Assembly: GCF_006345805.1 (NCBI RefSeq)
Contig: NC_043018.1
Span: 16,120,001-16,184,000 of the forward strand
From: Octopus sinensis
Taxonomy: Eukaryota
Reading direction: 5' to 3'
Length of the DNA: 64,000 bases
The stretch's first letter is position 1. Every line of letters begins with the position of its first letter. Below are positions 16,634 to 55,100 of the stretch, piece after piece. Both the position numbers and the translations under genes were made by a program. The notes beneath the pieces are model-generated. The model had not been told where the DNA came from. It searched no databases and saw only the letters and a program-made list of their open reading frames with translations.

Positions 16634-16679
<46 letters not shown>

Positions 16680-17959: not shown

Positions 17960-18030
17960 CTAGAAGAAAAACAGAGAAAAATTTTAAAAGCCACAAAAAC
18001 AAAACAAAAAACAATACATACAATGCAGTA

Positions 18031-18255: not shown

Positions 18256-18287
<32 letters not shown>

Positions 18288-22418: not shown

Positions 22419-22491
<73 letters not shown>

Positions 22492-22977
22492 TACGACAGG
22501 CTTCTTTCAGTTTCTGTCTAACAAATCCACTCACAAGGCATTGGTCGGCTCGGGGCTATAGCAGAAGACACTTGCCCAAGATGCCACGCAGTGGGATTGA
22601 ACCCAGAACCATGTGGTTGGTTAGCAAGCTACTTACCACACAGCCACTCCTGCGCCTATAGTTTATTTTTTTATAAGGTACGGGGCCAGATTAGGCCAGC
22701 TTGAAAATAAAACGGGAAGAATATTTGGGCCGGATATGACCTGTTTAAACGCTAAAAGGTTAAATAATATCAATCTTTGTTCCCCTTCTTTTTAAATTTA
22801 AATTGGTAAAGCAAAACAAGCTAAAAATATCTTGCTCATTACCGTTTAACTCCTTAGCAATTAATACCAGCTGCATCAAAACCCATTCATTACCATATTT
22901 GTGTTGAAATAAAACAACTTTGCTTTGATTAATTTTTAAAATAATGAATAATTTACACTAATAACTATCACTATTAA

Positions 22978-23361
22978 GGAGGAGGAAGCACTCCGTCGGT
23001 TACGACGACGAGGGTTCCGGTTGATCCGAATCAACGGAACAGCCTGCTCGTGAAATTGACGTGTAAGTGGCTGAGCACTCCACAGACACGTGTACCCTTA
23101 ACGTAGTTCTCAGGGATATTCAGCGTGACACAGAGAGTGACAAGGCTGGCCCCTTGAAATACAGGTACAACAGAAACAGGAAGTAAGAGAGAAAGTTGTG
23201 GTGAAAGAGTACAGCAGGGATCACCACCATCCCCTGCCGGAGCCTCGTGGAGCTTTTAGGTGTTTTCGCTCAATAAACACTCACAACGCCCGGTCGGGGA
23301 ATCGAAACCGCGATCCTATGACCGCGAGTCCGCTGCCCTAACCACTGGGCCATTGCGCCTC
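22978..23361 (-). mobile_element. tRNA-derived SINE (same head as 5050/13481, tail type 2) with 9-bp TSD; second copy at about 24569-24950
   Basis: CACTATTAA duplicated at 22969-22977 and 23362-23370; B-box GTTTCGATTCC. Confidence 0.85.
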
Positions 23362-24327
23362 CACTATTAAACAGGTGGTTAGAACACAAATTAATCTGAA
23401 ATCTTAAGATTTTAACTTAAGTTACTTTAAAACCTAAGTTACTTTAAAACCAGAGGGCTGCCTGCCAGAACCAGGGGTGGTTTCAGGCAGGTTGGCATCT
23501 AAGGAGTTAATTTTCAAATCAGCTAGATCTGGCCCTCCTCACATCTACCGTACAATGTTACTCCAAAAATAAAACAATCACATCATTGGAATTTCATTGT
23601 TATGAAACAATGCAGGATTTATTCAAAACAATGTTGTTAAATAAGCAATAAATTTGAGAGAATGAACTGAATGCTAAAGAGTGTTGCAAGTTGCTTGGCA
23701 ACCCTGCCAGTGCAGATGTCACGTAAAAAGCATCCAGTCCACACTAATGTGGGTTGGCATTTGGAAGGGAATCCAGCAGTAGGATATTTCGTTTTGGGAT
23801 TTGGTTTGAAAGATTCTTTATATGAGTTCTTGTGTTGAAGCATATTCTGTTGTGTCTGGGGAGAACCATTTCCTTTTTGTGCCTTATTATGTAACACACT
23901 CACCGGTAAAATTTCCACTTTTTTTTTTATTTTTATTGTCCTAAAATTTTCGTTGCGACTTGCAACCTTTTCAATAGCTTTGAAAATGGAGTCAAAACTA
24001 TTGAAAAGGTTGCAAGACGCAACGAAAATTTTAGGACAATAAAAATAATAAGAAAAAAAAAATCAACTGTAGGAACTGACCTCACCTGTGCTTGTGCCAC
24101 GTTAAATGCACTCATTCCACTCTGCTGGGTGGTTGGTTTTAGGAAGGGCAAAGAGCTGTAAAAACCATACCAAAACAAGAAGTCTGGTGTAGGCCCCTGT
24201 CTGGCCAGCTCCTGTCAAACCATCCAACCCATGCCAGCATGGAAGAAGGATGATAAATGATGATGATAAAACTTTATGAAGATGGTAGGGGCAGGAAATG
24301 GTAAAAATAGGTTTGGGTAGAACTTAC

Positions 24328-24444
24328 CTGTGGAATCAAACTGACATGGACACTGCAGAAGTTCTCTCTTTTCACTCGGAACTGGAACTGGCGGAAAGCT
24401 TCAACAAATGGCATACCTTCAATGTCACCAATGGTTCCACCAAG
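24328..24444 (-). CDS. CTPS: CTP synthase, coding exon 4 ([39 protein letters not shown])
   Basis: 117 bp, [10 protein letters not shown] signature across the splice junction, AG/GTAAGT ends. Confidence 0.98.
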
Positions 24445-25496
24445 CTTCAGGGGAAAAAAGAAAAACAAGCATATCGAATCAAAAGTTTAATTCTTGCAAT
24501 ACCAAGGAGCACAATTTAACATTCACAGCAACTGATAATATTTTCATAATTAATCAATCAATTGGATGAAAGCACTCCGTCGGTTACGACGACGAGGGTT
24601 CCGGTTGATCCGATCAACGGAACAGCCTGCTCGTGAAATTAACGTGTAAGTGGCTGAGCACTCCACAGACACGTGCACCCTTAACGTAGTTCTCAGGGAT
24701 ATTTAGCGTGACACAGAGAGTAACAAGGCTGGCCCTTTGAAATACAGGTACAACAGAAACAGGAAGAAAGAGTGAGAGAAAGTTGTGGTGAAAGAGTACA
24801 GCAGGGATCACCACCATCCCCTGCCGGAGCCTCGTGGAGCTTTTAGGTGTTTTCGCTCAATAAACACTCACAACGCCCGGTCTGGAAATCGAAACCGCGA
24901 TCCTACGACCGCAAGTCCGCTGCCCAAACCATTGGGCCATTGCGCCTCCAATCAATCAATTACAGTATCGATCAAGCCATCAGGTGCCGTTATACACTGC
25001 TGAGCACAATGCGCTTCCAGTTTTGACTTGTTTGCAACCATTCTTTACCATCTTGATCCAAATTATCTTCCCAATGCCATGGAGGCCTTCCAAGTGGCCC
25101 TTTGCTAATCTCTTGGGCACCACTTGGCCACTACATGGATCCACCTGTTGTCTGTGAACCTTGTGACACTGAACACAGAGTCATGTGATGAGGAAGCAAA
25201 CCTCTTGACCCTCAGGAACTGCACAATTAGGAGAACATTGTTAAATATTGCAAAACACCAACTTCAACCTTGATTCTTTTTGGGGTTTTTTTTTTTCTAA
25301 ATAAAATGGTTGGCATTAAATAACATCCAGCTGTAGAGGCGCAGGAGTGGCTGTGTGGTAAGTAGCTTGTTTACCAACCACATGGTTCCAGGTTCAGTCC
25401 CACTGCGTGGCACCTTGGGCAAGTGTCTATAGCCTCAGGCCGACCAAAGCCTTGTGAGTGGATTTGGTAGACGGAAACTGAAAGAAGCCTGTCGTA

Positions 25497-25547
<51 letters not shown>

Positions 25548-26259
25548 TGTCCCCCTAGCATTGCTTGACAACCGATGCTGGCGTGTTTATGTCCCCGTAA
25601 CTTAGCGGTTCGGCAAAAGGGACCGATAGAATAAGTACTGGGCTTACAAAACGAATAAGTCCCGGGGTCGAGTTGCTCGATTAAAGGCAGTGCTCCAGCA
25701 TGGCCACAGTCAAACGACTGAAACAAGTAGAAGAGTAAACCAAGCCAGGCCAAGCCATGGAACTTGGTGTGGCCCCAGGCCTTGCCAATCCCTGTCAAAG
25801 CTGTCCAAACTATGTCAGTATGCAAAACGGATGTTAGATGTTGATGATGATGTTCCGATGGGGTGGTCGTGTGGTTAAGAAGTTTACCTCCCGACCACAT
25901 GGTTTCAGGTTCAGTCCTATTTCACAGCACCTCAGGCAACTATTGACCAAAGCTTTGTAAGCGGGTTTGATAGAAAGAAACAGAAGAAAACTTCTGTGTG
26001 TGTGTGTGTGTGTGTGTCTTGTCTCCACGTGGCATGATAGTTGTAAACAAGTGCCATCGTTATGCAAGCAGTGTGATTCAATTCCCAATATTCTTGAGAC
26101 ACATGCATGTGCACACACACACTCTCTCACACAGAGAGGCTTCCTTCAGTTTCTTCCTATCAAGCCCAACTCACAAGGCTTTGGCCAACAGTTGCCCAAG
26201 ATGCAGCAAAATGAGAGAGGTGGGGAGCACAGGCAGGCAGAAAAGCAATAACAACATAC

Positions 26260-26360
26260 CTCGATAATACAAACATCAGGTTCTGCTTTGTCTTCACTGA
26301 CAGGAATTTTGGCAACTCTTTCAACCCATTCTTGGATGGCATCTGTTATGTGGGGGACAA
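26260..26360 (-). CDS. CTPS: CTP synthase, coding exon 3 ([34 protein letters not shown])
   Basis: 101 bp, [11 protein letters not shown] motif, AG/GTATGT ends. Confidence 0.97.
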
Positions 26361-28059
26361 CTGAAAGAGTAAGACAGAATTCACAGACTTAAGAAGACCA
26401 GATGTTGGGGGGGAAAAAAAAGAAAAGGAAGTTCAGAAAAATGGTGGCAGAACAAACAAGAGATTCACAAAAGGAAGGACAGCGAAGAATTAGAGAGGGA
26501 CATTTAGTTGATAGCATCAATTTGAGTACTTGACTGGTATTTTTACCTATTAACCCCAGAAGGACGAAGACATATGTGAAATTAGACCTGAACTAAGAAC
26601 ATCAAATATAGTAAGGCATTTTTTCCAAGGTTCTAAAGATTCTTAGTTAATTCATCACCCTGATGATGGTCGTGGAGGCTTTACAGTCAAACTGACCGCA
26701 TCCTGCCTCTCATGCATAACATACAATGCCATTCTAAAACTAAGCAATCACATCATCGAAGCCACAAAGCTGTGAGATAATGCAGGATTAATTCAAAACC
26801 ATGTGAATAGAGGCATAGCTGTGCAGTAAGAAGCTTGCTTCCCAACCACATGGTTCTGGGTTCAGTCCCACTGCATGGCACCTTGGGCAAGTGTCTTCTG
26901 CTATAGCTTCAGGTTGACCAAACCTTGTTAGTGGATTTGGTAGACGGAAACTGAATGAAGCCAGTCGTATATACATAGGTGTGTGTGTGTGTGTTTGTCC
27001 CCCCCACCATAGCTTGACAACCAATGTTGGTATACCCCCCCACTATAGCTTGTCTCTCACCATAGCTTGACAACCGGTGTTATGTTCCTGTAACATAGCA
27101 ATTCACGTACACACACACAATTCATAGAGAGAGAATGACAGAATGACACACAGACACACACCCACGTCCATACATGTGCACACACATTCTCACTCTGCCC
27201 CCACCCCCACTCCACCACACACAAAGCAACAGAACGACACAAAAATAGACATACACACACACACACTCATACACGTGCACACAGACCCATACGTTTTACT
27301 CACCTACTCATTTCCACTGTCCACACACACTTCAGACTACACACATGCATCCACACACCCTTCAGACAACATAGTTACAATGTGAACCTCTAAATCACAT
27401 GGCCATACTTGCACTTACATAAATAGGGGTTTTTTTGGAGGGGGTTTAACTATCACTCCATTTCTTTAGTTAAAGGTTTTTCCTTGAGACTACTTCAAAA
27501 CTGGAAGTTTGAACCAGGGAACCAGGAGCAATTGTGGGGTGGGGTTCGGAGGCCTGAGGTAACCCAACATGAACTAAAGATCGATCTTCAACCGATGTAA
27601 CCCAAATGACAATCACAGATTTGACCCTTTAACATTCAGATTACTGTCAAATGCTCTGCATATTCATTCACATTGTTTTCAATTAACTATGCAGATAGCT
27701 CACAGCTTGCGAGATTCCGATGACTGTTTCTGATGTGAATGACATTGTCAGGTAGGTGTGAAAGGTCAGACTTGGCAGGTTTGAACATTTTGGGCTAGAT
27801 AAGGCAGGTTTCAATGCTAAAGACATCCTGCATTATCTCAGATCTGATGTAACCGTTCAGTTTTTAGGACACTAGGGTAGATGTAAGAGGCTGGGTCTGG
27901 CCGGTTTGAACATAAAACACAATATTTTGGCCAGATATGGTTGGTCCGAGTGCTAACGGTTTAACTGTCTAGCATTCAGATTATTCTGTCAAGTGCGATG
28001 CTTATCCATGTTGTTTCGAATTAATCATGCATTATCTCAATGCTTTGAGATTTCAAATA

Positions 28060-28479
28060 CGAAACAACCGAACAAACTCAGACACAACAGAGGCCTAAAT
28101 CAAGTGCCTGGAGGAGGTAGTGCTGCCCTGGCGAAGAGGGTGACTGCTGGAAGACCTTATGTCTGGCAACAGGACTCTGCATCATGCAACACAAGCTGGA
28201 GAACCCAGTCATGGCTGTTTGGTAATTTCTGCAAACACGCTACCCTTAACATCTGGCCACCTAACTTCCCAGACTGCAAGCCCCTTGATTATTATGTGTG
28301 GGGAGTAGTTGAGCGAGAGACCACGAAAACTCCTTGTAACACCAAAGATGAACTGAAGGCAATGATTATGGCAGCAACTTAAACCAAACTTAAACAAGGA
28401 GACCGTCCAAAAGAGTTGCAAGAGATTCCGAAGTAGTGTGGAAGGTGCAGTTAAAGCCAAAGGTAATTTTATTGAATAA
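28060..28479 (+). pseudogene. Decayed Tc1/mariner (DD37D, maT-like) transposase C-terminal fragment
   Basis: YVWQQDSA...WPPNFPDCKPLDYYVWG with 37 residues between the two Asp; frameshifts and stops. Confidence 0.8.
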
Positions 28480-28662
28480 ATTTACTCTTTAGTATTTCAA
28501 GATATCTTTATGTAATTTTGGTTGTTAAAATGTGATTGTTTAGGATTTGAATAACATTGTCAAGTAGGTGTGAAAGGTCAGATCTGGCCAGATTGAATAT
28601 AAGACAGAATATTTGAGCTGGATGTGGCCTGTTAAATGATTCTATCAGATATGTCTGCCATA

Positions 28663-28737
28663 TGATGTGACTCAGTACAAATTTGTCTTCAGATATCAGA
28701 ATACGTTCACTGGTATAAAGTCATCACTGTCACATCA
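28663..28737 (-). ncRNA. Intronic box C/D snoRNA candidate, copy 1
   Basis: 9-bp perfect terminal stem TGATGTGAC/GTCACATCA, box C GTGATGA, D-prime CTGA, C-prime TGAAGA, box D CTGA; same strand as CTPS; paralog at 42395-42464. Confidence 0.8.
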
Positions 28738-29211
28738 CGTCTCTGGTTCCTGCTAGAGACACACAGCAGAAATATTGATAAAAAATAAAAACAGGGGAGT
28801 TTTAAGTGCAACTCTGTCAACACAATGCAACATAGCTTTAAAAAAAAAAAACCATTATACAATATAGTTTATTGTTTTGTCATTTGTGTGTGCGTATGTC
28901 TTTCAACACAGAGACAAGGTAACACAAGCTTTAAAAAAGACTTTCACAATAATTATAGGGAGCTGCTGTTGTAGCTGAGAGAAAAATTCCAAGAGAGATA
29001 GAGTGTGTGTGTGTGTGTGTGTGTGTGTATGAGTGAAAGATAGGTAGTGTTGTCACCATAGTAACTATTTATACTTTCACCATATAACAGTCTGTAGAAA
29101 CAATGTACATGCATGATTAACAAATATTTTTACTGGCAGTGTAGCGACAGGTAAAGACCAAGCCGTCCATTTCAATTGCATACATTGATTAAACAATCAA
29201 CCGGTTTCTAC

Positions 29212-29382
29212 CTTGCACAGTTTTCCCTAAATAATCTCCAGTGCGTTCTCTGTTTATAACTTGCTGGTATATCTTTCCAGTCGTTATGTTGTTGTCCCTG
29301 TGAAGGGTGATGTTGAGGAATCGTTCATAGTTGCCCAAGTCAAGATCAACCTCACCGCCATCGTCCAAGACAAACACTTCAC
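29212..29382 (-). CDS. CTPS: CTP synthase, coding exon 2 ([22 protein letters not shown]...GDYLGKTVQ)
   Basis: 171 bp, [10 protein letters not shown] signature, AG/GT ends. Confidence 0.98.
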
Positions 29383-39681: not shown

Positions 39682-39847
39682 CGTGTTCATAAGGAGAGAA
39701 AGTTCCGGCATCAATGTTAATGTAAGGATCAATCTTAATCGATGTCACTTTTATATTGCATGCCTTCAACAGAGTTCCGATGCTGCTGGCAATGACCCCT
39801 TTACCAAGACCACTAATCACACCGCCTGTCACAAGAATGTACTTCAT
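39682..39847 (-). CDS. CTPS: CTP synthase, coding exon 1 ([24 protein letters not shown]...[16 protein letters not shown])
   Basis: ATG at 39847, 166 coding bp, P-loop-like [10 protein letters not shown]; donor GTACGT; upstream acceptor ccatctccag at 39881 gives 33 nt of 5-prime UTR (39848-39880). Confidence 0.98.
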
Positions 39848-40424
39848 AATGTGATTTGGCCTAACACAATGTCTGATGTTCTGGAGATGGAAAAGAAAAA
39901 GGAAGAAAAAATAAAATATTGTACATGAAAATATACAACTATCATCATTATTTTAATTTTTAGCATTTAAACTGGCCAAATTTGGAGAAAATATTCTACC
40001 TGTTTCAGATCAAATTAACTATAATAATTAGCAGGCTTCAAAAATAATGGAGTCAATTCATTCGACTAAAAGTTTAACCCTTTATTTAGTGTTCAGATTA
40101 TTCAATCAAACATAATGCTTATTGATTCCCATTGATTTGAATTCATCATGCATTATCTCATATCTTCAAGATCTTGATGGTGTAATTACTTAATGTAGAA
40201 TAACATTGTAGGGTAGGTGTGAGGGCCTGGATCTGGTCAGTTTGAACATAAAACAGATTAACTATTTTGGCCGGATATGGCCGGTTTAAATACTAAAGGG
40301 TTAAGGCAGTGCCCCAGCATAGCCGCAGTCTAATAGCCTGGTGCAGCCTCCTGGCTTCCCAGACCCCAGTCGAACTGTTCAGCCCATGGAAATCAGATGT
40401 TAAACGATGATGATATATATATAT

Positions 40425-41395
40425 TGTTATGAGTAGGTCAATTCAAGGACAGTGCTTGCAACCGACTTTTTGTGAGCTGGCGTCAAGCAGGCGAGTAAAT
40501 CCTTTGTCCCGTCAGATTCTGGAGAGAGTGATGGCTTTTGGGGAGACCTTCGACCCTTTTCAGGTGAAAGAAAGTTTGAGGAAGCACCCCTTTAAAAAGC
40601 AGGAGATATGAGTCTGTTACACAGTTGGGGACAGAGCGAGTTAGTGACAGGTGGTTCTGCCGGAGACAGTGAATGTGAAAGAGGCAGACAGGCAGAGAGG
40701 ATTAAGGAGCTGAGAAGGAACTGGGAGAGATTGCGGCGAGAGGGCATGGCCATTGCGGTAGTAGTTTCTGAAATTGTTGCAGACTGGAAAGAACATTCGG
40801 TAAAGTTTTGTTTGTGTCTTTTGGTTGTTGTATTTTGATGTGTTAAAAAAAAAAGAGAAAGAAGGAAAGAGGAAACAGAAAGAACAGTGCTAAAGAGAAA
40901 AAGAAATAAAATTGTAAAGCCATTGTGAAAAGAGTTGTTGAAAAGAAAGAAAGGAAGGAGAGAGACTAATGTATCGTTAATGTGAACTGTATCGTTAACT
41001 GTATCGTTAATGTGAACATTATGTTTTGATGGCTTTGACGGTCTGTATTGTGCATGCCTTTGATTGTAACAGAACGACGTGAACTGTTTAAATGCTTTGA
41101 TTTTGTTGCTTGTATTTTCTTTAATGTACCTGCTATGAATCACATTTCATTTTATGTTGTAATAATTGTATAAACTGTTCTTAAATGTAAGCTACTGCCT
41201 TCTTCTGTATCTCTTCCTGTTGTTGTTGCTATCTCCGGTCGCCGGGTTCGCTGCCGCCTTCCCCCACCGAATTCTCTCTCTCCCCGAGTCCGTGGCGAGT
41301 GCGCCGATCGATCAGGCCGGTAAATCGTCGTCGCTCGACTTGGTAGGGTCCCGGGTTTTCCGAAGAGTTTGAGCGACGGCAGGTGGTTCGTAACA
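40425..41395. mobile_element. Solo LTR (probably Gypsy-type), 971 bp
   Basis: TG...CA ends with imperfect inverted termini TGTTATGA/TCGTAACA and a 4-bp ATAT duplication (40421-40424, 41396-41399); no internal gag/pol. Confidence 0.7.
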
Positions 41396-42394
41396 ATATG
41401 TATAAATTATTTATGGATTAAGAAGGTAATCAATAGTTTCATGTGGAAGAGATCTGAATAACCTCATCCAAAATCGAAATGAGTACGAAGACTCCGACGT
41501 GACAAGCTTGAACAATTGTGGCAATCTCTTCTACATGAAACAATTGGTTGCCTTGAAAATCCACAAATGAAGAACATCTACCAACCAATGCAGTACTGAG
41601 CACTCAGCCTCACAATCTGCTAATAGGTTTTGGGTGTGTTCCAGAGAGCCTAACTCTCATCCTTATCACCTTAGTTCTCACCTATTCTGATGACAAATGC
41701 ATAAGGGCCCATATCAACCACACATGTATTCCATTCACATCATTTATACTTGCCACAAGCTATTTGCTACATTCATGCATCATTCACTCCTCCCTTTTAT
41801 CCACTGCTTGCTGTCTCTCATTCTCCAGAGCTAGCAATAGCCATGATAAAATGCACCAAGGACGCTCAAATAATAGGGTTGAGGGGACCTTTAAGTCTTG
41901 CCAAAAAAAGTAACAACCTTTTTAATGCATGTAGCACAAAACAATGTACCCTTTGAATTACACACACAATCATTCTGACAAGCTTCAATACAGTTTCTAT
42001 CCACCCAATTTCATTCGCAGGGTATGCATCGAAAATTACATTTTCCCAAGATTCCACACAGTGAGATTGAACTCTGTGGTTGTCAGCTATACCGTTCCAC
42101 ACACACACACAAGTAGAAAATGCGGTAGTCAAAAATTCATAAGACATACACTCATTTCGGCAAAACGTCAAAATGATTACATAACAAATAGAGACATTAC
42201 GCATCAGGCATTACACCTCTTCGATGTTTTACCATAGGAGTTAAGGGGCAAAACACTTGCCCGAGTGGGGTTTCTTCCTTGAAAAACCTTCTGCCGTTCA
42301 GACCACAAGTTTCTTAGCACCACTTCATACACACAAACACAAAAGCACACACGCATGCACACACAAACAATGTAAGAGATAGAAGTTAACAACA

Positions 42395-42464
42395 TGTGAC
42401 TCAGAATAAAACATTTCTTCAGTAATCAGAATACGTTCACTGATTAAAGATCATCATTGTCACA
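42395..42464 (-). ncRNA. Box C/D snoRNA candidate, copy 2
   Basis: Stem TGTGAC/GTCACA, box C ATGATGA, guide CAGTGAACGTATT identical to copy 1 before D-prime CTGA, C-prime TGAAGA, box D CTGA. Confidence 0.8.
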
Positions 42465-43669: not shown

Positions 43670-45815
43670 AGCGGTTGGGAGGCAGTTGCCGGCAACCGTG
43701 GAGAATGGCGATGTACAGTAAAAGAGGGAATACAAAAGAGTGACAGCAACCGTGGAAAATGGTGACGTACAGTAAAAGAGGGAATACAAAAGAGTGACAG
43801 CAACCGTGGAGAATGGTGACGTACAGGAGAAGAGGGAATACAAAAAGTGACAGCAACCGTGGAGAATGGTGACGTACAGTAAAAGAGGGAATACAAAAGA
43901 GTGACAGCAACCGTGGAAAATGGTGACGTACAGTAAAAGAGGGAATACAAAAGAGTGACAGCAACCGTGGAGAATGGTGACGTACAGTAAAAGAGGGAAT
44001 ACAAAAGAGTGACAGCAACCGTGGAGAATGGTGACGTACAGGAGAAGAGGGAATACAAAAGAGTGACAGCAACCGTGGAGAATGGTGACGTACAGTAAAA
44101 GAGGGAATACAAAAGAGTGACAGCAACCGTGGAAAATGGTGACGTACAGTAAAAGAGGAATACAAAAGAGTGACAGCAACCGTGGAGAATGGTGACGTAC
44201 AGTAAAAGAGGGAATACAAAAGAGTGACAGCAACCGTGGAGAATGGTGGACGTACAGTAAAAGAGGGAATACAAAAGAGTGACAGCAACCGTGGAAAATG
44301 GTGACGTACAGTAAAAGAGGGAATACAAAAGAGTGACAGCAACCGTGAGAATGGTGACGTACAGTAAAAGAGGGAATACAAAAGAGTGACAGCAACCGTG
44401 GAGAATGGTGACGTACAGGAGAAGAGGGAATACAAAAGAGTGACAGCAACCGTGGAGAATGGTGACGTACAGTAAAAGAGGGAATACAAAAGAGTGACAG
44501 CAACCGTGGAAAATGGTGACGTACAGTAAAAGAGGGAATACAAAAGAGTGACAGCAACCGTGGAGAATGGTGACGTACAGTAAAAGAGGGAATACAAAAG
44601 AGTGACAGCAACCGTGGAGAATGGTGACGTACAGTAAAAGAGGGAATACAAAAGAGTGACAGCAACCGTGGAAAATGGTGACGTACAGTAAAAGAGGGAA
44701 TACAAAAGAGTGACAGCAACCGTGGAGAATGGTGACGTACAGTAAAAGAGGAATACAAAAGAGTGACAGCAACCGTGGAGAATGGTGACGTACAGTAAAA
44801 GAGGGAATACAAAAGAATGACAGCAACCGTGGAGAATGGTGACGTACAGTAAAAGAGGGAATACAAAAGAGTGACAGCAACCGTGGAGAATGGTGACGTA
44901 CAGGAGAAGAGGGAATACAAAAGAGTGACAGCAACCGTGGAGAATGGTGACGTACAGTAAAAGAGGGAATACAAAAGAGTGACAGCAACCGTGGAGAATG
45001 GCGACGTACAGGAGAAGAGGGAATACAAAAGAGTGACAGCAACCGTGGAGAATGGCGACGTACAGTAAAAGAGGGAATACAAAAGAGTGACAGCAACCGT
45101 GGAGAATGGTGACGTACAGTAAAAGAGGGAATACAAAAGAGTGACAGCAACCGTGGAGAATGGTGACGTACAGGAGAAGAGGGAATACAAAAGAGTGACA
45201 GCAACCGTGGAGAATGGTGACGTACAGTAAAAGAGGAATACAAAAGAGTGACAGCAACCGTGGAGAATGGTGACGTACAGGAGAAGAGGGAATACAAAAG
45301 AGTGACAGCAACCGTGGAGAATGGCGACGTACAGTAAAAGAGGGAATACAAAAGAGTGACAGCAACCGTGGAGAATGGTGACGTACAGGAGAAGAGGGAA
45401 TACAAAAGAGTGACAGCAACCGTGGAGAATGGCGACGTACAGTAAAAGAGGGAATACAAAAGAGTGACAGCAACCGTGGAGAATGGTGACGTACAGGAGA
45501 AGAGGGAATACAAAAGAGTGACAGCAACCGTGGAGAATGGTGACGTACAGTAAAAGAGGGAATACAAAAGAGTGACAGAGGGAGAGAGGAGAAATGGAAA
45601 GAAAGGAAGAGACGTAAACAAGAGACTATGGCACTACAACCAGCCAGGAACAGTCTTCGCTACATTTGCGGTACCTGCCAGAGGGAGTGTTTGTCCAGGA
45701 TAGGACTACACAGCCACAGCAGGAAATGTATTAGGACATGAAATATAAAAGCCGGACTAGACTACAAAAAAAAAAAAAAACATGCACAACCTCCCGAGAC
45801 AGAAAGGATGCCAAT
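43670..45815 (+). mobile_element. 5-prime-truncated RTE-clade LINE 3-prime end with internally amplified ORF2 segment
   Basis: Flanks read SGWEAVAGNRGEWR-TVKEGIQKSD...RGREEKWKERKRRK...YICGTCQRECLSRIGLHSHSRKC-stop (45739-45741), then a CTCCCGAGACAGAAAGGATGCC 3-prime end. Confidence 0.8.
43692..45577. repeat. Minisatellite, about 35 x 54 bp
   Basis: Unit GCAACCGTGGAGAATGGTGACGTACAGTAAAAGAGGGAATACAAAAGAGTGACA with a few recurrent variants. Confidence 0.97.
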
Positions 45816-45871
<56 letters not shown>

Positions 45872-48383
45872 TATGTATATGTGTTTGTACACACACCTGC
45901 AGGCATACACAGAGAACACTTGACTAAGGGGCCTTATGCAATGAGACTGAACACGAAATTATGCAAATAAGTCAAAAGAGAAGACAAACAAACGAAGCTT
46001 GTAAACGAGTTGGTTGATTATTTATATAGATAAAGCAGGTGAACAAACTATGAAGTGTTTGTATAGAGGTCAGAGCAACCTAAAACCAGATCTAAAATAA
46101 TTGAACTTACCATAGCATATGTAATTGGGCAGACAACCAGACAGAGAAAAATAGCTCTGACTGACTTTAATTGATGCTCTGGTAACTGTTGCCTTTCATC
46201 AACATCATCAATTTCCCTCACTGGCTCGTCAGAGGACCGTGCCAAGTTCTGTCTGCTTTGGCATCAATATGGTTTTTTTATGACTGGATGCCCTTCCTAA
46301 ATGCCAACCACTTTACAGAGTGTAGTGGGTGATTTTTTATGTGGCACCAGCACTGGTGAGGTCACCAAGTAATATGCAAGACAAAGATAAAGCTTCCCCT
46401 CGATTGGGGGAAGCGTAATATTGAGAGGGGTCAATTTGTACCAGGTGATGTGGAGTTAAGCTATAAGGGGATATAGACAGGTGTCTTACTACAGAGTAGG
46501 TATATGACTATCTTTGCTGAACAGAGAGAGACAGAGAGAAAGAGAACAAAAGGAAAGGTGGAGGTGAAGATGTGCCAAAGCATACCTTCAAGGTACAAGA
46601 GGTTAAAGTGGAATGGTACAGATTAATGGACAGGGGGAGTGAGAAGGGGGGGTTTACAAGAGTGTAAATGGATAGAAGATAGGTGGGGGGGAGAATCATG
46701 AAGAATTCAGTGGAATAACTTTTGTCCTTATTAAGATTTGTTGGAAGAATTGAATTTAGATCATTTTAAATCCTTCAACATTCAGATTCCTCTGTCAAAT
46801 GTAAAGCTTATTTATCCATATTTTTTCTGAATTAATCAGGCATTTATTTCAAAGTTCAAAGATTTCAAAATTTGTGTCTAATTACTTTTAGAATGGCCTT
46901 GTAGGGTAGATGTGAAAAGCCAGATCTGGCTAGTTTGAACATAAAACGGGCACTCCATCAGTTACAACAATGAGGGATTCCAGCTGATCCCATTAACAGA
47001 ACAGCCTGCTCATGAAATTAATGTGCAAGTGGCTGAGTATTCCACAGATATGCAATACCCTTAATGCAGTTCTCAGAGAGATTCAGCGTGACAAAGCTGG
47101 CCCTTTGAAATACAGGTACTACTCATTTTTGCCAGATGAGTGGACTGCAGCAATGTGAAATAAAGTGTCTTGCTCAAGGACAAAACGCTTTGCCAGGAAT
47201 TGAACTCATGAACTGAATATCCAAACCACTAAAGCCACACACTGTCGAATGTAAAGCTTATTTATTCGCACCATTTTGAATGAACCATGCATTGTTTTCA
47301 CAGCTTCCCCCAATGCCTAGATATATTTCCATAGAAGATGAGAACAAATGATACCATTTCCACAGAAGTGATGCTCATTTTCCAGCTTTCACACAAGGGT
47401 AACCAAAAACAAATATGGTATAATGACCCTTTCAAGGTACAAACTTATTAAATTCCTTGTTAATTTCAAATTGAAACAAAGGTGGTACGTAAAAAGCACT
47501 ATCCGACTCGTGGCCGATGCCAGCGCCGCCTCGACTGGCTTCCGTGCCGGTGGCACGTAAAATACACCAATCCGACCGTGGCCGTTGCCAGCCTCGCCTG
47601 GCACCTGTGCAGGTGGCACGTAAAAAGCACCCACTACACTCACGGAGTGGTTGGCGTTAGGAAGGGCATCCAGCTGTAGAAACATTGCCAGATAAGACTG
47701 GAGCCTGGTGCAGCCTCCTGGCTTCCCAGATCCCGGTCGAACCGTCCAACCCATGCTAGCATGGAGAACGGACGTTAAACGATGATGATGATGATGATGC
47801 GGTATTGCATTTCAAGGGAAATCTAGTAAGAAAAGGGCTCTTATAAAAGGGTTTACCTTATGGAAACAAGTTCAGTGCTTTTAAACAGTTTCCCAAAAAT
47901 ATTTCCTGTGTCAACCCTTTTAACATGTTATAATCGTCCTCGTTTTGAAGCACTTCGAGAATTTTGTTACTAACCTGCCCAAAATTGTCCTGGCCCCTAT
48001 GAAACAGGCTTTCTGTTTTAACCCCTTTTGATACCAAAGCACCTGAAACAGCCCCTCGTTCCATGACACAAACTTCATTTTAAAGTATTCTAAATTAAAA
48101 CCATCCATTAAAAATCCATGGTTATCTTCCAAGCACCAACTTAATGACAAAGTTAATTTACTCAATTAATTCAAACAAAGCCAATGTATGGTGATATGGT
48201 AATAAGGGGGTTAAATTAAAACCTTCAATCAAAAAATGTTAATTTAAGTTTCAACACTAGGTTAATTAATAACAGCAAACGGTTAAACCACACAGTTATT
48301 TATGCACCTTATATAAAACGATTTACCTTTTGGTAGTAAACTACAACATTTCTAAATTAATTTTGAGAAATATTTCATGTTAA

Positions 48384-48602
48384 CCCTTTCGTTACTTTAT
48401 ATTTTGAGATGCTCTGTGTTTCTTTCAATTAGTTTAAATATAAAAAAGAATTTAGTAAAATAACTTGGTTATCATTCAGCTAGTGTTAGGAACATAAATT
48501 GTGACTAAGGTTTGGTGGAAGATTTTAATTCAAAAGTTATGAAAACAAGACATTTGTACTACAGAACCAGAGCCGGTTTCGGCCGGGTTGGTAACGAAAG
48601 GG
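48384..48602. mobile_element. piggyBac-type MITE, second family; related copies at about 12800-13015 and 48020-48225
   Basis: TTAA flanks (48380-48383, 48603-48606) and perfect 12-bp TIR CCCTTTCGTTAC/GTAACGAAAGGG. Confidence 0.8.
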
Positions 48603-50486
48603 TTAAACCACACTGCCATGCATGTACCTGAAGTAGAATTATTTACCATTTTGGGAGCAAGACAATGGTGTTTCTAAGTGACTTTCAGGAAATACTTTGT
48701 GAGTTAAAGAAAATCAGCAGCACAGCTATAGTGACCCATTCTTCATTCTCAAACAAAGTTATGAAACTCAAACTTACCATTAACATGAGACTACAGAACC
48801 GAGAAGATGGTGAGAGGAAATAACAGGATTCTGATGGCAAAAATGAGCCTCCAAATGGTGTTGAGATTCTATCAAATGAAGGGGAAATGGTCAATCAAGT
48901 TTCTGGCACTCCATTGAATCCTGCAAACTTCACACAGTTTAGTATTTAAACTAGCCATATCTGACCCAAATGTTCTACCCGTTTTATGTTCAAAGCAGCC
49001 AGATTGGACCTCTCACTTATCCAACAACGCCATTCTAAAGATAAAACATGCATTCCAATCTCAACAGTGCAAGTGGCAACGAGAAAAAGCATCCAGTCCG
49101 AACTATAAAATGGTTTGTGACACTAAGGAAGGGCCTCCCGTTGCAAAAAACTATACCAAAGACGATGCTGAAACACAATCCAGTTCTTGGATATCAGATC
49201 CAATCAAATCCTCCAACCCATTAAATTATGAGTGTGTGTGTGTATATACGTGTGCAACAGCTGGGTTTAATTAGCACATATTTACCTTGTAACACCTGCC
49301 ATGTACACAAATGCTTCTGCCTGTTTACATTTACAACTAGAGCTAATACAACCATATTTTCTTACACATGTTCCATATACAAACACCACACAGACATCTA
49401 CATACATAAATGCACACACATACACACACACACCTATTAATCCAATGAAATAGCCATCATGTGGGTAACTCCCTTTTCCAAGTGTAATAACTTGTCCTGT
49501 ACTTTTCTAGAAGAATATTATTTTCCTTGCTCACATTTAACCATGTAATCCATGATTTTTCCAGGCTTCGTCTGGCCTCCGTGCCGGTGGCATGTAAAAA
49601 GCACCATCCGAGCATGGCCGTTCGCCAGCCTCGTCTGGCACCTGTGTCGGTGGCATGTAAAAAGAACCCACTACACTCACGGAGTGGTTGGCGTTAGGAA
49701 GGGCATCAAGCTGTATAAACACTGCCAGATCAAGATTAGAGCCTGGTGCAGCCTTCTGGCTTCCCAGACCCCAGTTGAACCTTCCAACCCATGCTAGCAT
49801 GGAAAGTGGACGTTAAACAATGATGATGATGTTAATTAAAAATGTGTCAATTAGCAGTGTTATTAATTTTTTCCTTATTTCAGTGATATTAAAAGTCCCC
49901 TAGAACTATATTATCACCCTCAAATTTGAGAAACAAATATTCATAGCTCTTTCCTTTTAAAACTTCATTGTATGAAATTCTTCTAATTGAGATCCATCAT
50001 TCAAGCTTAATTAAAATATAGTTGTTTTTAAAATAAACAAGTTAATCATACTTAAATCCAACATTTTGCCTTTTTTTTTCGTGATATTTTACCTCAACTT
50101 TTTTGATACAAAGTTTTGTTGCATGGAACCAAAACTATGAAATTCTTCATCCTTTCTTCTATCATTGAAGCTAAGAGAAATAAATTTTGCTTTTATAATG
50201 AAAAAAGTTATTCAGATCTAAACTTGATTGGTGACGTTACTTTGCTACAAAATCTTCTGAAATGAAAACTTTTTTTTCTACAGGATCAAATCTCAATTTT
50301 TTCATACCAAAATGTAGCTAGGGACCAGTCCTCTTTAAAAATACTGGTTTTCCATTTGATTAAGAACTGAATTAGTGACAAGCTCTGAAAGATGCTGCAC
50401 GTGAGTAAATTGCAGCCTTAATATTCAACTACTACCAAAGTTGAATGATATATATGTGTATATATATATATGTGTGTATATATATA

Positions 50487-50517
<31 letters not shown>

Positions 50518-50936
50518 CATGCTAGCATGGAAAGCAGACGTTAAATGATGATATATATTATATATACACATATTGCATATACATCATGTCTGTGTTCCTA
50601 TCTATCATCATTTAACGTCCACTTTCCATGCTAGCATGGGTTGGACCGGGGTCTGGAAAGCCAGGAGGCTGCACCAGGCCCAGTCTGATCTGGCAGTGTT
50701 TCTACGGCTGGATGCCCTTCCTAACGCCAACCACTCCGTGAGTGTAGTGGGTGCTTTTTAAGTGCCACTGGCACAGGAGCCAGGCGAGGCTGGCAACGGC
50801 CATGATCGGTTGGTGCTTTTTACGTGCCACCGGCACTGGTATCACAACTACAATTTCCATTGATTTTTGATCGATTTTGATTTCACTTGCCTCAACAGGT
50901 CTTCACAAGCAGAGTTTTGTGTCCCAAGAAAGAAAG

Positions 50937-50982
<46 letters not shown>

Positions 50983-51734
50983 CACACACACACACAGTGT
51001 ATTCAGTACTCTTATCTCTCCACATCCAAAGTATTGAATGCACCAATTGACCAGTTCCCAGCTGATTGGTGCAGTCAGTGATCACATGGCATTGCCACAG
51101 GTACAGGTAACAACAACAGCAGCAACTAAAAGTGCCGACTGATTAAGGCCAATCCCACGACATATACGATTACAGGTGATGATGGTGAAACAATTTACAT
51201 CTTATGCATTTTTTTTTTTGTTACTGTGGCCATGCTGGTGCAGCACCTTGAGTTTTTAGCCGGGCAAATCGACCCCAAGACTATTTCTTCAGCCTAGTAC
51301 TTATTCTATCAGTCTCTTTTCGACAAACTTCCAAGTTACAGGGATGCAAACACACCAACACCGACTGTCAAGCAGTGATGGTGGGACAAATACACACACA
51401 CACACACAGACGACAGGCTTCTTTCAAATTCTATCAACCAAATCCATTCACAAAGCTTTGGTCAGTCGAAAGCTATAGCAGAAGACACTTGCTTAACACA
51501 GCCATTTTTATTATTTTTTCTAAAGCTATATTTACGCCTTGTGTAAATTGAGTACTCTACCTGTCCCTACACCTACATATCAAGTTTGAAAACAAAAAAA
51601 TTAAGAACAAAAGGCATGATGGTCGCTACTGGAGCATGTCTGATGCGTCTGGGATTTATGCAGAATGCATTGTTCATGCTCAACACACAAAACACTGAAC
51701 AATTTGATCCACTGAAGCAGAAATCTGGGAGAAA

Positions 51735-51907
51735 GAAACAGGCGAGAGAGAGGAGAGAGGAGAGAGAGAGAAAGAGAGAAAGAGAGAGAGAAGAGAGAGA
51801 AAGAGAGAGAGAAGAGAGAGAAAGAGAGAGAGAGAGAAGAGAGAGAGAAGAGAGAGAGAGAGAAGAGAGAGAAGAGAGAGAGAAGAGAGAGAGAAGAGAG
51901 AGAGAGA

Positions 51908-51941
<34 letters not shown>

Positions 51942-52130
51942 AGAGAGAGAGAGGAGAGAGAAGAGAGAGAGAGAGAGAAGAGAGGACAGAGAGAGGAGAG
52001 AGAAGAGAGGACAGAGAGAGGAGAGAGAAGAGAGGACAGAGAGAGGAGAGAGAAGAGAGAAGAGAGAGAAGAGAGAAGGAAGAGAGAAGAGAGAGATAAA
52101 GAAAAGAAGAGAAAAGCGTGGAGAAGAAAC
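51735..52130. repeat. About 400-bp near-pure polypurine (GA/GAA/GGA) microsatellite tract
   Basis: Almost only A and G on the + strand. Confidence 0.95.
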
Positions 52131-55100
52131 ATACATAAGGAGAGGAGTGGAGGGGGGGGGAGAAAGCGCAACTTTAATTAAAATATAGATTGCGGAAGAT
52201 ATTAATTAAAAAAAAAGCAAGCTTAGACTTAATGGAGATCAAACCAAACGACCACCAGTCTGATATAATAGGAAGGACACAGTAAATATGGCCATTGTTT
52301 AAAAAGAAAAAAAGAAACGGAACACATCCAAATCGTTTCATTCTAATTGCTCAAGTTCTATTATATATAATATAATGGTGGATCTTTGTCAACCTACATT
52401 ACTTGTTTTTTTTTTCTAGCACGAATTATTGTGTAACCGCAGCCAACGTCGGTGGGTTATTGTGCTCGAGAGACACATGGATCCACATGTGGGTTGTTTA
52501 GCAATCCAGCAGCCTGCTTTGTTTGTTTGTTGTTATATAAACGGCAGAGAGAGAGATAAGCCCATTGCTTCGGATTAAAACACACACAGCTGAGGGCAAA
52601 TGAACTCTCTCTCAAAGAACACGCACTTTTAGAATAGGGCAGGACTCCTCTTCGAATAAAAAAGCTTAACATTATAGGCGCAGGAGTGGCTGTGTGGTGA
52701 GTAGCTTGCTAACCAACCACATGGTTCCGGGTTCAGTCCCACTGCGTGACATCTTGGGCAAGTGTCTTCTGCTATAGCCCCGGGCCGACCAATGCCTTGT
52801 GAGTGGATTTGGTAGACGGAAACTGAAAGAAGCCTGTCGTATATATGTATATATATATATATGTGTGTGTGTGTTTGTGTCTGTCCCCCTATCATTGCTT
52901 GACAACCGATGCTGGTGTGTTTACGTCCCCGTCACTTAGCGGTTCGGAAAAAGAGACCGATAGAATAAGTACTGGGCTTACAAAGAATAAGTCCCGGGGT
53001 CGATTTGCTCGACTAAAGGCGGTGCTCCAGCATGGCCGCAGTCAAATGACTGAAACAAGAAAAAGAGAAAGAGAAAAAAAGAGAATCTCGTAGCAAACTA
53101 AGAGAACAAGACCAGTCCTCTGTACCATCTTAAAGCATGGACACACTGACACACTAAAAAGTGCCTAAGTGCATCTCGAGCGTAAGGGCTTTTTTTTTTT
53201 GGTTAATTAGCTGAAAAGCTTTCGATGGGGTAGATTCCTTGTGCTGATAAATTTTTTTGAAAAAATTTTCTTTTGGCAAACGTAAAGAATGTGGACCACA
53301 CTCTTCGTTTTTTCCTACGTATTTCGCAAAAAAAAAAAATTACTGAAAAAAATTAAAATCGAAAAATTGGTGAGGAATTAAAATTTTAAAATGCCGTTTT
53401 TGGGGGGATTGCAAAATCTCCGCAGGAAAGAAAAATAGCAGAATTTGGGTTTTGCATTTTTTTTTTTAATATTCCTGTTCCATACAACAGAAATACTATT
53501 TCTGAAAGACCTTGTTTGTTTTCCTTGAAAAAAAAAAAAAAAAGATTAAATTTTTTTTCATAGGTGTGGCTGTGTGCATAGTTCCGGGTTTATTATACCC
53601 ACTACGTGGAACCTTCGGCAAGTGTCTTATTGCCTCGGGCCGACCAAGGACTTGGGAGTGGATTTGATAGGTGGGAGCTGAAAGGAGTTTTATTGTATCT
53701 TTGTGTCTGGTACCCCAACTCTCGCTTGACAATCGGTGGTGGTGTGTTTACGTTCCCTTGATTTGGCAGTTCGGATAAAGTGAACGCTAGAATAAATACC
53801 AAGCTTTAAAAAAAAAATAATAATAATAAAGTTCAAGGTAAGTGCTCCAGCATGGCCGCAATCTAACGACTGACGAAAGGGAAAGATTTTTTTTCCCTTC
53901 TAATCACATTTTCATGTCTTTTTCTTCCTTGTGAAGTACAAGACTTCGAAACAGTTATTCCAAATACTCTGCCACTAAATTGATTTCTAAAAAAACTGCC
54001 AAAGGTGACAACCACCACCGAAACTAAACACAAAAACGTTAGCAAGCAAGCGATATTAGAGTTCGCGTCTCAGCAGAGGACCTTTTAATTATTTTTATTT
54101 CGTTCTTGGACTAATTGACCATAATTTTAGAGTAAGGAACATCAACGGTTAATACACATCTAGGACTTCAGAGGGGAGGAGAAAGAAAAGCAGTAGAGTA
54201 AACCAGATAAGATTTTAATTCAGTTAAGAGGCACTTAATCAGATACAAGCATTGTGTTTGGCATTAAGCCATTAATTTCTATAAGAGGCTGTTACGTACA
54301 AACCAGACCATTATATATGGCGAGCTTACCATTCCGACGATCGACTATATCTAAGTTTAGTGTCGACTGTCTGAAGGCAATCGATACTATCAACTTGCCT
54401 CAAGACTTTCAGCATTCTAAGGCAGAAAGAGGGGCAAGGCACCGACTCAACCGAAATATAATATACACAGATCTTTAACAAATGTATATTAAATTAGTCT
54501 TTTTTCTTTGGTACTACTCCTCTGCGATACAAGTACCTTTTTCTTTAATATATTTTGGTGGCGAATGCCGATATTTTATATATTATGTATTACAGACGGG
54601 TATGAGAGCAGAGTAAGGTTTATTGCATGGAGAGAAAAAATATATCGGTGGAGTATATTACTGCAAATAAAATATATATCTTTTGTACAGATGTTCACAT
54701 CTTTACAAAAATTACATCCGTAAAGCAAATGCTTGTCCCTAAATGCATTAAAAATACAATAAAATACTAATATAACCTGAAAACGATTTCAGGTAATTAT
54801 CTCCGTTGTCTCTGAATGTATCAAAGGCAAATTTAGATACGGCAGAGATAAGGTAAATTTTAATTTTTCAATTCTGCAGAATTATATTTGGTAAAAAAAA
54901 AATTTTTTTTAAACTCATGCACCGCAATTAGATCAGGAATGCTGCAGAAATTTTTATTATAACGACTTTCTTTCGTTTTTGGTTATGTCAGATGAAAGAG
55001 AATCATATGAAATTAATAAAATATCAGCCTAAATATCTTCTCAACAGCTTTTTTTCACGATCTGCTTGAATGGCTCTCTTCCTGATATAATTGCGCACCA

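What the first reader, a model, noticed from the sequence alone, without database searches (positions are those of the whole stretch)
42395..42464. Second copy of the same snoRNA upstream of the start codon
It lies 2.5 kb upstream of the ATG exon on the same strand. Intronic snoRNAs are processed from host pre-mRNA (established), so this copy implies a 5-prime UTR intron extending beyond 42464. It also suggests the snoRNA was duplicated between introns of one host gene with its guide preserved. A CTP-supply enzyme hosting duplicated rRNA-modification guides would couple nucleotide synthesis to ribosome biogenesis (inference).
Basis: partly seen in the sequence, partly recalled or inferred. Interest (0 to 1): 0.7.

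Follow-up and report, generated by a model that had tools for sequence, protein, structure and literature searches.

The report
Second box C/D snoRNA upstream of CTPS
A real, selectively maintained second copy of a small RNA that guides ribosomal RNA methylation lies 2.5 kb upstream of an octopod CTP synthase start codon; this is ordinary snoRNA biology, and whether it sits inside the gene's first intron remains unproven.

Summary
Window 42395-42464 (minus strand) is a textbook 70-nt box C/D snoRNA: 6-bp terminal stem, C box AUGAUGA, D' CUGA, C' UGAAGA, D CUGA. It is a paralogue of a copy at 28666-28734 in the intron between CTP synthase coding exons 2 and 3. The two share 45 of 46 stem, box and D'-guide positions but only 11 of 24 spacer positions, so both are under purifying selection. 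A dead pseudogene is rejected.

Argonauta hians has the intronic copy in the orthologous intron, but no second copy within 10 kb upstream. Oyster, abalone and limpet CTPS loci have neither.

The conserved 13-nt D' guide pairs with the conserved 18S segment UACGUUUACU. It places the methylation on the equivalent of human 18S-C797, a validated Cm site. Vertebrates guide that site from COX7C. No octopod 18S was available to confirm this.

A 5'UTR intron exists: its acceptor, 33 nt before the ATG, is conserved across molluscs. Whether it reaches past 42464 is unproven. CpG depletion continues upstream to about 52.5 kb, which favours that. A CpG-rich patch plus donor at 41.1-41.4 kb is a competing proximal first exon.

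No Rfam family matches. This is a new member of a known kind, and the proposed coupling of CTP supply to ribosome biogenesis has no specific support.

The parts
42395..42464 (-). Upstream box C/D snoRNA copy, 70 nt. 5' stem 42464-42459; C box 42457-42451; variable stretch 42450-42443; conserved D' guide 42442-42430; D' box 42429-42426; C' box 42421-42416; D-side spacer 42415-42405; D box 42404-42401; 3' stem 42400-42395.
   Evidence: Sequence; own scanner with shuffle control; covariance model 97.4 bits; terminal stem forms when folded; sub-threshold generic C/D hits in Rfam on this strand.
28666..28734 (-). Paralogous box C/D snoRNA in the CTPS intron between coding exons 2 and 3. It has the same stem, boxes and 13-nt D' guide, and its external stem extends to 10 bp (28662-28738).
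   Evidence: 92.7 bits. Orthologue in the same intron of Argonauta at L001 11658-11731. It is the only collinear conserved non-coding element in the gene body.
39682..39880 (-). CTPS ATG exon: 33 nt of 5'UTR (39880-39848) plus coding sequence from the ATG at 39847. It is preceded by a polypyrimidine tract and the acceptor AG at 39882-39881.
   Evidence: Conservation with Argonauta starts at 39883. An acceptor at the same place is present in four other molluscs.
4309..29382 (-). The remaining 14 CTPS coding exons (29382-29212, 26360-26260, 24444-24328, 21179-21096, 17959-17879, 17185-17031, 15509-15377, 14559-14471, 12315-12221, 11082-10976, 8958-8862, 7588-7533, 6170-6074, 4667-4309). The model is 635 aa.
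   Evidence: tblastn plus a GT-AG splice model; 85% identical to Argonauta hians CTP synthase 1-like.
41130..41400 (-). Candidate proximal promoter and first exon (the rival placement). A unique CpG-rich patch at 41400-41230 is followed by CAG|GTACAT, with the last exon base at 41130.
   Evidence: CpG o/e 1.33; sequence; unique in the window; donor 7.3 bits against 4.4-13.1 bits for the gene's own donors. Function not shown.
45500..52500 (.). Upstream CpG-depleted domain (o/e 0.40), continuous with the gene body. The switch to CpG-normal DNA (o/e 0.97) falls at about 52.5-53 kb, which is a candidate region for a distal transcription start.
   Evidence: The analogous boundary lies no more than about 1 kb from the ATG in oyster and abalone, and about 7 kb in Argonauta. 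Inference only.

Best explanation
The element is a functional, single-guide box C/D small nucleolar RNA and a paralogue of the copy in CTPS intron 2. Its C and D boxes, brought together by the 6-bp terminal stem, would form the kink-turn that assembles the fibrillarin methyltransferase particle. That step follows from established C/D snoRNP knowledge. The 13-nt element CAGUGAACGUAUU directly upstream of the D' box base-pairs with 18S rRNA at UACGUUUACU. By the rule that the nucleotide opposite the fifth guide position upstream of D' is modified, it directs 2'-O-methylation of the cytidine equivalent to human 18S-C797. That is an inference from heterologous 18S sequences. The D-side spacer (10-13 nt) is not conserved and probably guides nothing. 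Like nearly all animal C/D snoRNAs, the RNA is most likely released by exonucleolytic trimming of a spliced intron of a sense-strand transcript. The most probable host is a long CTPS 5'UTR intron that starts upstream of 42464 and ends at the acceptor at 39882-39881. Shown here: the anatomy, the paralogy, purifying selection on both copies, the existence and age of the 5'UTR intron, and the octopod-restricted association with CTPS. Inferred: the target, expression from the CTPS pre-mRNA, and that the duplication happened within the window's lineage after its split from Argonauta.
For: Anatomy and chance control.

Paralogy. Homology is limited to the RNA plus about 10 nt of flank.

Selection: 45 of 46 functional positions are identical against 11 of 24 spacer positions (Fisher p = 6e-7). 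A neutral pseudogene model predicts about 16 changes in the 46 functional positions where 1 is seen (P = 5e-8).

Orthologue: Argonauta has a copy in the same intron, and it is the only conserved intronic element in the gene.

Target: the guide pairs 12 of 13 (3 of them G-U) with GGUACGUUUACUU in 18S. This is the only site that recurs across 119 oriented rDNA contigs, and it is the best or second-best duplex in whole rDNA units. The nucleotide opposite guide position 5 is residue 797 in a vertebrate-type 18S of 1869 nt. Human SSU-C797 is a validated Cm site (PMC5027482, PMC5597630).

Host: the acceptor 33 nt upstream of the ATG is conserved across five molluscs. CpG depletion is continuous from the coding body past the snoRNA to about 52.5 kb, and Argonauta shows a similar 7-kb depleted stretch with no other gene called in it. 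None of the ten longest upstream ORFs tested carries a Pfam domain. Strong donors (8 bits or more) on the minus strand occur only upstream of 45.8 kb.
Against: No RNA data of any kind were available, so expression and exon 1 are unobserved.

A unique CpG-rich patch with a 7.3-bit donor lies between the snoRNA and the ATG exon. It could be the real CTPS promoter and first exon.

No second copy exists within 10 kb upstream of the Argonauta ATG.

No octopod 18S was in hand. About 22% of shuffled guides also hit some recurrent rRNA site at the same stringency, so the duplex alone is weak evidence. The support comes from the position-5 coincidence with a known Cm.

The Argonauta guide has A instead of G at that very position. 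That would be an A-C mismatch if the target is C.

No Rfam family reaches its gathering threshold.
Confidence: 0.5

Rival explanations
1. The snoRNA is functional but is not part of the CTPS pre-mRNA. CTPS transcription starts at the proximal CpG-rich patch (about 41.2-41.4 kb, donor at 41130). The snoRNA sits in an intron of a separate sense-strand non-coding host transcript, or of a minor alternative first-exon or read-through isoform, that begins further upstream.
For: The CpG-rich patch is unique (o/e 1.33) and flanked by depleted DNA, like an unmethylated promoter island. The donor CAG|GTACAT scores 7.3 bits, within the range of the gene's real donors. In oyster and abalone the CTPS start lies within about 1 kb of the ATG exon by the CpG proxy. 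The upstream CpG-depleted domain fits a transcribed host of any kind. From my own knowledge, the human SNHG3/RCC1 arrangement is a precedent for a snoRNA host unit lying upstream of a coding gene and partly shared with it.
Against: No exon, promoter or donor of such a host was identified. No gene is called upstream in the Argonauta locus. An intronic CpG-rich patch could equally be an alternative promoter or a young insertion. The patch shows no similarity to Argonauta.
Confidence: 0.28
2. The snoRNA is an independently transcribed gene with its own promoter, as some invertebrate, plant and yeast snoRNAs are.
For: A TATA-like TAATTAAA lies 21-28 nt upstream of the mature 5' end (42491-42484). 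The copy is 2.5 kb from the nearest downstream exon. There is no counterpart in Argonauta.
Against: The AT-rich context makes such a motif likely by chance. No snRNA-type proximal element or terminator was recognised. The paralogue and its Argonauta orthologue are plainly intronic, and the bona fide intronic copy is also 2.3 kb from its downstream exon, so distance is not informative here.
Confidence: 0.08
3. The copy is a non-expressed relic (snoRNA pseudogene) that merely looks intact.
For: No expression data. No orthologue in Argonauta. The terminal stem is shorter (6 bp) than in the intronic copies (9-10 bp).
Against: Spacers have diverged by 54% while 45 of 46 functional positions are identical. 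Under neutral decay about 16 changes are expected (P = 5e-8). Even if only a quarter of the divergence fell on this lineage, P = 3e-4.
Confidence: 0.04
4. The snoRNA is functional, but the conserved D' guide targets something other than 18S C797: another rRNA or snRNA site specific to cephalopods, or it is an orphan guide.
For: About 22% of shuffled 13-mers find a recurrent rRNA site at the same stringency. The Argonauta guide has A at the methylation-specifying position. The match in vertebrate-type 18S has two mismatches. The octopod 18S was not seen.
Against: Only about 1.5-2% of rRNA residues are methylated, yet position 5 falls exactly on one. No other recurrent site was found in 18S, 5.8S or 28S. 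The conserved part of the guide is exactly the 13 nt next to D'.
Confidence: 0.4

Closest known systems
Vertebrate guides for 18S-Cm797: human ZL107 (= Z39) and chicken GGgCD20
   Same: Box C/D snoRNAs that are intron-encoded, with the same predicted target nucleotide (human 18S-C797, chicken C757) (PMC2653536, PMC5027482, PMC4053766).
   Different: The vertebrate RNA sits in COX7C intron 1 and uses the 3' (D-box) antisense element of 11 nt. The octopod RNA sits in or next to CTPS and uses the 5' (D') element of 13 nt. No sequence homology was detectable through Rfam. The two probably share a target without sharing ancestry.
Multi-copy intronic box C/D snoRNAs spread over several introns of one host gene (in chicken, the HBII-251/U103 snoRNAs in PUM1 introns 9, 12 and 21; HBII-108 in GNL3 introns 5, 7 and 9; U32 in KPNB1 introns 4 and 7)
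   Same: Paralogous copies with the same guide in different introns of a single housekeeping host, produced by intragenic duplication (table in PMC2653536).
   Different: Here the second copy's intronic status is unproven, and the host (CTP synthase) has not, to my knowledge, been reported as a snoRNA host. The association is limited to octopods among the molluscs sampled.
Generic Rfam box C/D families with the best partial scores (snoZ169, snoR122, SNORD79, snoR38, SNORD26, SNORD58)
   Same: Boxes, terminal stem and length align end to end on the minus strand.
   Different: All scores (12-29 bits) fall below the gathering thresholds (36-55 bits for the five best-scoring hits). The guide regions do not align, so the RNA belongs to none of these families.

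Membership tests
Box C/D snoRNA | C box RUGAUGA near the 5' end and D box CUGA near the 3' end | tested here: met
   AUGAUGA at 42457-42451 and CUGA at 42404-42401.
Box C/D snoRNA | Short terminal stem that brings C and D together (kink-turn context) | tested here: met
   6 bp, UGUGAC/GUCACA. It forms in both the MFE and centroid folds. The stem is invariant in all three sequences, so covariation could not be assessed.
Box C/D snoRNA | Internal D' and C' boxes with short spacing | tested here: met
   D' CUGA and C' UGAAGA (one deviation from UGAUGA), 4 nt apart, conserved in all three sequences.
Box C/D snoRNA | Antisense element of at least 10 nt directly upstream of D or D', complementary to rRNA or snRNA, with a known methylated residue opposite the 5th nucleotide | tested here: inconclusive
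   12 of 13 pairs (3 G-U) with heterologous 18S. Position 5 falls on the C797 equivalent, a validated Cm. No octopod 18S was available, the shuffle control is only moderate, and Argonauta has A at position 5.
Box C/D snoRNA | Sense-strand intronic location in a host gene (the usual animal arrangement) | tested here: inconclusive
   The 28.7 kb copy is intronic. The 42.4 kb copy is sense to CTPS and upstream of a conserved 5'UTR acceptor, but exon 1 was not located.
Box C/D snoRNA | Stable RNA of about 70 nt bound by fibrillarin, NOP56, NOP58 and SNU13 | not testable with these tools
   No RNA or protein-binding data. Purifying selection is indirect support.
Any curated Rfam snoRNA family | Score at or above the family's gathering threshold | tested here: not met
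   0 matches in the 64 kb at gathering thresholds. The best hit is 29.1 bits against a threshold of 55.
ZL107/Z39/GGgCD20 (vertebrate 18S-C797 guide) | Guides 18S-C797 | tested here: inconclusive
   Predicted from heterologous 18S only.
ZL107/Z39/GGgCD20 (vertebrate 18S-C797 guide) | Hosted in COX7C intron 1, with the guide at the D (3') box | tested here: not met
   The host here is CTPS or its upstream region, and the guide lies at D' (PMC2653536).
Same snoRNA family as the CTPS intron-2 copy | Alignable over the full length with identical boxes, stem and guide | tested here: met
   80% identity overall and 45 of 46 functional positions. Covariance model scores are 97.4, 92.7 and 87.3 bits against 15.6 bits or less for background. 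The model was built from these same sequences.

The most novel reading that the evidence does not exclude
Octopods evolved their own guide for the conserved 18S-Cm797 site, independently of the vertebrate COX7C-hosted one. They embedded it in CTP synthase and then duplicated it into the gene's 5' region, so that one pre-mRNA yields two doses of the same methylation guide. With C797 methylation reported as fractional and growth-state dependent in human cells (PMC10911272), guide dosage tied to a proliferation-linked nucleotide-synthesis gene could tune ribosome methylation with growth. The A-for-G change in the Argonauta guide would then mark either target covariation or loss of the modification in that lineage.
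Probability: 0.12. Interest if true: 0.5.

Novelty: new member of a known kind. Interest (0 to 1): 0.3.

Why it matters
The finding adds an unannotated box C/D snoRNA family, absent from Rfam, to the cephalopod non-coding repertoire. It gives a testable target, the 18S C797 equivalent. It also illustrates snoRNA host switching (CTPS in octopods, COX7C in vertebrates) and intragenic duplication. For annotation, it flags that the octopod CTPS 5' end is probably longer than the coding model suggests. It does not reveal a new mechanism. The suggested metabolic coupling is no more than the co-expression that any intronic snoRNA has with its host.

Tried and rejected
- Rfam at gathering thresholds gave no hits. 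Permissive scans of both copies gave only generic, sub-threshold C/D matches.
No protein of the window's own species appeared in the database searches.
- The 5'UTR of a related cephalopod-like transcript (L002, 80% protein identity) shows no similarity to the window or to Argonauta beyond shuffle level. Exon 1 could not be placed by homology.
- The one non-repeat conserved upstream block (58628-58746 against Argonauta 9548-9663) is inverted relative to CTPS, looks like a decayed coding or transposon fragment, and has no Pfam hit. I rejected it as exon 1.
- The ten longest non-low-complexity upstream ORFs have no Pfam domain.
- A second copy upstream of the Argonauta ATG was not found by blastn-short, my scanner or the covariance model.
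- Copies in oyster, abalone and limpet CTPS loci with 10-kb flanks: none. The look-up for the chiton protein failed.
- The D-side spacers of all three RNAs have no recurrent complement in rDNA.
- There are no retroposition hallmarks (poly-A tail, target-site duplication) and no flank homology between the copies.
- I recalled rRNA and snRNA sequences from memory to find the target. This produced nothing reliable, and I replaced it with real rDNA contigs from the metagenome scan.
- The literature search found no report of cephalopod snoRNAs in CTPS.

Full report
**1. The observation**

Read on the minus strand, window 42464 to 42395 is TGTGAC-A-ATGATGA-TCTTTAAT-CAGTGAACGTATT-CTGA-TTAC-TGAAGA-AATGTTTTATT-CTGA-GTCACA. 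This is the full anatomy of a box C/D snoRNA:
- a 6-bp terminal stem;
- C box AUGAUGA;
- a 21-nt stretch ending at an internal D' box CUGA;
- C' box UGAAGA four nucleotides further on;
- an 11-nt spacer, then D box CUGA.

A related element lies at 28666-28734 on the same strand. A simple scanner of my own required canonical C and D boxes and a stem of at least 5 bp. It found only these two strong candidates in the 64 kb, on both strands. It found none with a stem of at least 6 bp plus a D' box in 20 shuffles.

**2. The gene context**

Six-frame translation and tblastn show a complete CTP synthase gene on the minus strand. The tblastn reference was recalled from memory and served only as an alignment scaffold. 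A GT-AG splice model gives 15 coding exons from the ATG at 39847 down to the stop at 4309, for 635 aa. The best database match is Argonauta hians CTP synthase 1-like at 85% identity. Argonauta is an incirrate octopod, so the window comes from an octopod.

The 28.7 kb copy lies in the intron between coding exons 2 (29382-29212) and 3 (26360-26260).

**3. Are both copies functional?**

The two window copies are 80% identical overall, but the differences are not spread evenly. In the stems, boxes and the 13 nt next to D', 45 of 46 positions are identical. In the spacers, the variable stretch of the guide and the D-side spacer, only 11 of 24 are identical (Fisher p = 6e-7).

Suppose the upstream copy had drifted neutrally since the duplication. 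The spacer divergence (JC distance 0.96) then predicts about 16 changes among its 46 functional positions, and one is seen (P = 5e-8). Even if only a quarter of the divergence fell on this lineage, P = 3e-4. A dead pseudogene is therefore very unlikely.

Homology between the copies stops about 10 nt outside the RNA. There is no poly-A tail or target-site duplication, and the immediate flanks are unique in the window. The duplication is therefore old and its mechanism is no longer readable.

The terminal stems form in thermodynamic folds. The folds are otherwise unremarkable, as expected for this RNA class.

**4. Relatives elsewhere**

The Argonauta CTPS locus (L001) carries one orthologue at 11658-11731, in the orthologous intron. 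It has the same stem, boxes and guide, except for one base.

A comparison of the whole gene body between the two octopods finds this snoRNA as the only collinear conserved non-coding element. That is independent support for its function.

No second copy was found in the 10 kb upstream of the Argonauta ATG, either with my scanner or with a covariance model built from the three sequences. Oyster, abalone and limpet CTPS loci with 10-kb flanks have no copy at all.

Among the molluscs I could sample, the association with CTPS is therefore confined to octopods. Two states are shared by both window copies against Argonauta: G rather than A in the guide, and C rather than A before C'. These hint that the duplication happened after the split from Argonauta, but the spacers are too saturated to date it.

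**5. What the guide targets**

Only the 13 nt next to D' (CAGUGAACGUAUU) are conserved. The D-side spacers differ in all three RNAs and find no recurrent complement in rDNA. This is therefore a single-guide snoRNA.

No octopod rRNA could be reached.
- On the rRNA sense strand, the only recurrent site is GGUACGUUUACUU in 18S: 12 of 13 pairs, three of them G-U.
- That site is the best or second-best duplex in whole rDNA units that carry this flank.
- The core CGUUUACU is widely conserved, while the four nucleotides 5' of it vary between taxa.
- In a vertebrate-type contig with an 1869-nt 18S, the residue opposite the fifth guide nucleotide upstream of D' is position 797.

Human SSU-C797 is an experimentally validated 2'-O-methylcytidine (PMC5027482, PMC5597630). 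It is fractionally methylated and varies with growth state (PMC10911272).

Three caveats apply:
- About 22% of shuffled guides also hit some recurrent rRNA site at the same stringency. The weight of the argument lies in the coincidence with a methylated residue, which make up roughly 1.5-2% of rRNA positions.
- The vertebrate-type sequence itself pairs with two mismatches.
- The Argonauta guide has A where the window has G, at exactly position 5. This is either covariation with a U in Argonauta 18S, loss of function there, or a sign that the target is something else.

I put the C797 assignment at roughly 0.55-0.6.

**6. Is the upstream copy inside a CTPS intron?**

A 5'UTR intron certainly exists. 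A 35-nt polypyrimidine tract ending in CAG lies 33 nt upstream of the ATG. Conservation with Argonauta begins exactly there. An acceptor at the same place is present in Argonauta, oyster, abalone and limpet. Its length is the open question, because exon 1 could not be located.

Indirect evidence for a long intron comes from CpG content.
- CpG observed/expected is 0.55 over the coding body, 0.57 at 40-43 kb and 0.40 at 45.5-52.5 kb. It switches to 0.97 at 53-61 kb.
- In oyster and abalone the same switch lies within about 1 kb of the CTPS ATG. For this gene it therefore tracks the start of the transcribed, presumably methylated, domain.
- In Argonauta the depleted stretch runs about 7 kb upstream, with no other gene called in it.
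- None of the ten upstream ORFs tested carries a Pfam domain.
- Donors of 8 bits or more on the minus strand occur only from 45.9 kb upwards.

Against this, a unique CpG-rich patch at 41400-41230 (o/e 1.33) is followed by CAG|GTACAT at 41130. That donor scores 7.3 bits, within the range of the gene's own donors. If this is the CTPS promoter and first exon, the snoRNA lies about 1 kb upstream of the start. It would then need another sense transcript as host, such as a non-coding host gene or an alternative distal first exon.

My estimates are:
- about 0.5 for the CTPS 5'UTR intron;
- about 0.28 for a separate or alternative upstream host;
- about 0.08 for an independent gene;
- about 0.04 for a relic.

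**7. Comparison with what is known**

In vertebrates the C797 guide (human ZL107 = Z39, chicken GGgCD20) is in COX7C intron 1 and uses the D-box element (PMC2653536, PMC4053766). The octopod RNA uses the D' element, sits in a different host and matches no Rfam family at threshold. It works like that guide but is not a demonstrable member of its family.

Multiple copies of one snoRNA in several introns of one host are commonplace. The chicken table lists PUM1, GNL3 and KPNB1, among others.

The association is lineage-restricted, and hosts for this target differ between phyla. This is the usual picture of snoRNAs moving among well-expressed housekeeping genes.

**8. Verdict**

The element is a new member of a known kind: a selectively maintained box C/D snoRNA paralogue, probably guiding 18S-Cm797-equivalent methylation, and probably but not demonstrably intronic. 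Interest is modest.

Noticed in passing
window 43692-45578: A 54-bp minisatellite of 35 copies (96% matches; also scored as 3.9 copies of a 485-bp higher-order period). It lies 1.2 kb upstream of the snoRNA. It is open in all three minus-strand frames and keeps a near-normal CpG content.
   Followed up: partly
window 58628-58746; L001 9548-9663: A 119-nt block that is 78% identical between the window and Argonauta but inverted relative to CTPS. It lies 340-450 nt upstream of the ATG in Argonauta and 18.8 kb upstream here. The substitution pattern looks codon-like (peptide PSSPSKL..QVVL). In the window it sits next to a SINE-like element, and it has no Pfam hit.
   Followed up: partly
L001 11680-11692 versus window 42442-42430 and 28712-28700: The Argonauta guide reads CAGUGAACAUAUU, where both window copies read CAGUGAACGUAUU. 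The single difference falls on the fifth nucleotide upstream of D', the position that selects the methylated residue.
   Followed up: partly
window 43190-43342, 47644-47797, 49681-49839, 50609-50737, 60832-60996, 61748-61901; L001 5684-5837 and others: A SINE-like repeat family of about 150 nt is shared by the window and the Argonauta locus. A second repeat of about 84 nt starts 210 nt upstream of the snoRNA (42674-42757) and has at least 11 further matches in the window.
   Followed up: no
window 51740-52096: About 350 bp of (GA)n, which is (TC)n on the CTPS strand. It lies just inside the boundary between the CpG-depleted and CpG-normal domains.
   Followed up: no
window 4309-4667 (last CTPS exon): The predicted C-terminal tail carries tandem NGII(K/R)E-like repeats ([37 protein letters not shown]). 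This part aligns with Argonauta at only about 54% identity.
   Followed up: no
window 29383-39681 versus L001 10169-10591: The first coding intron is 10.3 kb here and about 0.42 kb in Argonauta. The window's species has far larger, repeat-filled introns in the same gene.
   Followed up: no
window 41160-41143: The candidate proximal first exon contains a short upstream open reading frame (ATG AAA TGT GAT TCA TAG) just before the putative donor at 41130.
   Followed up: no
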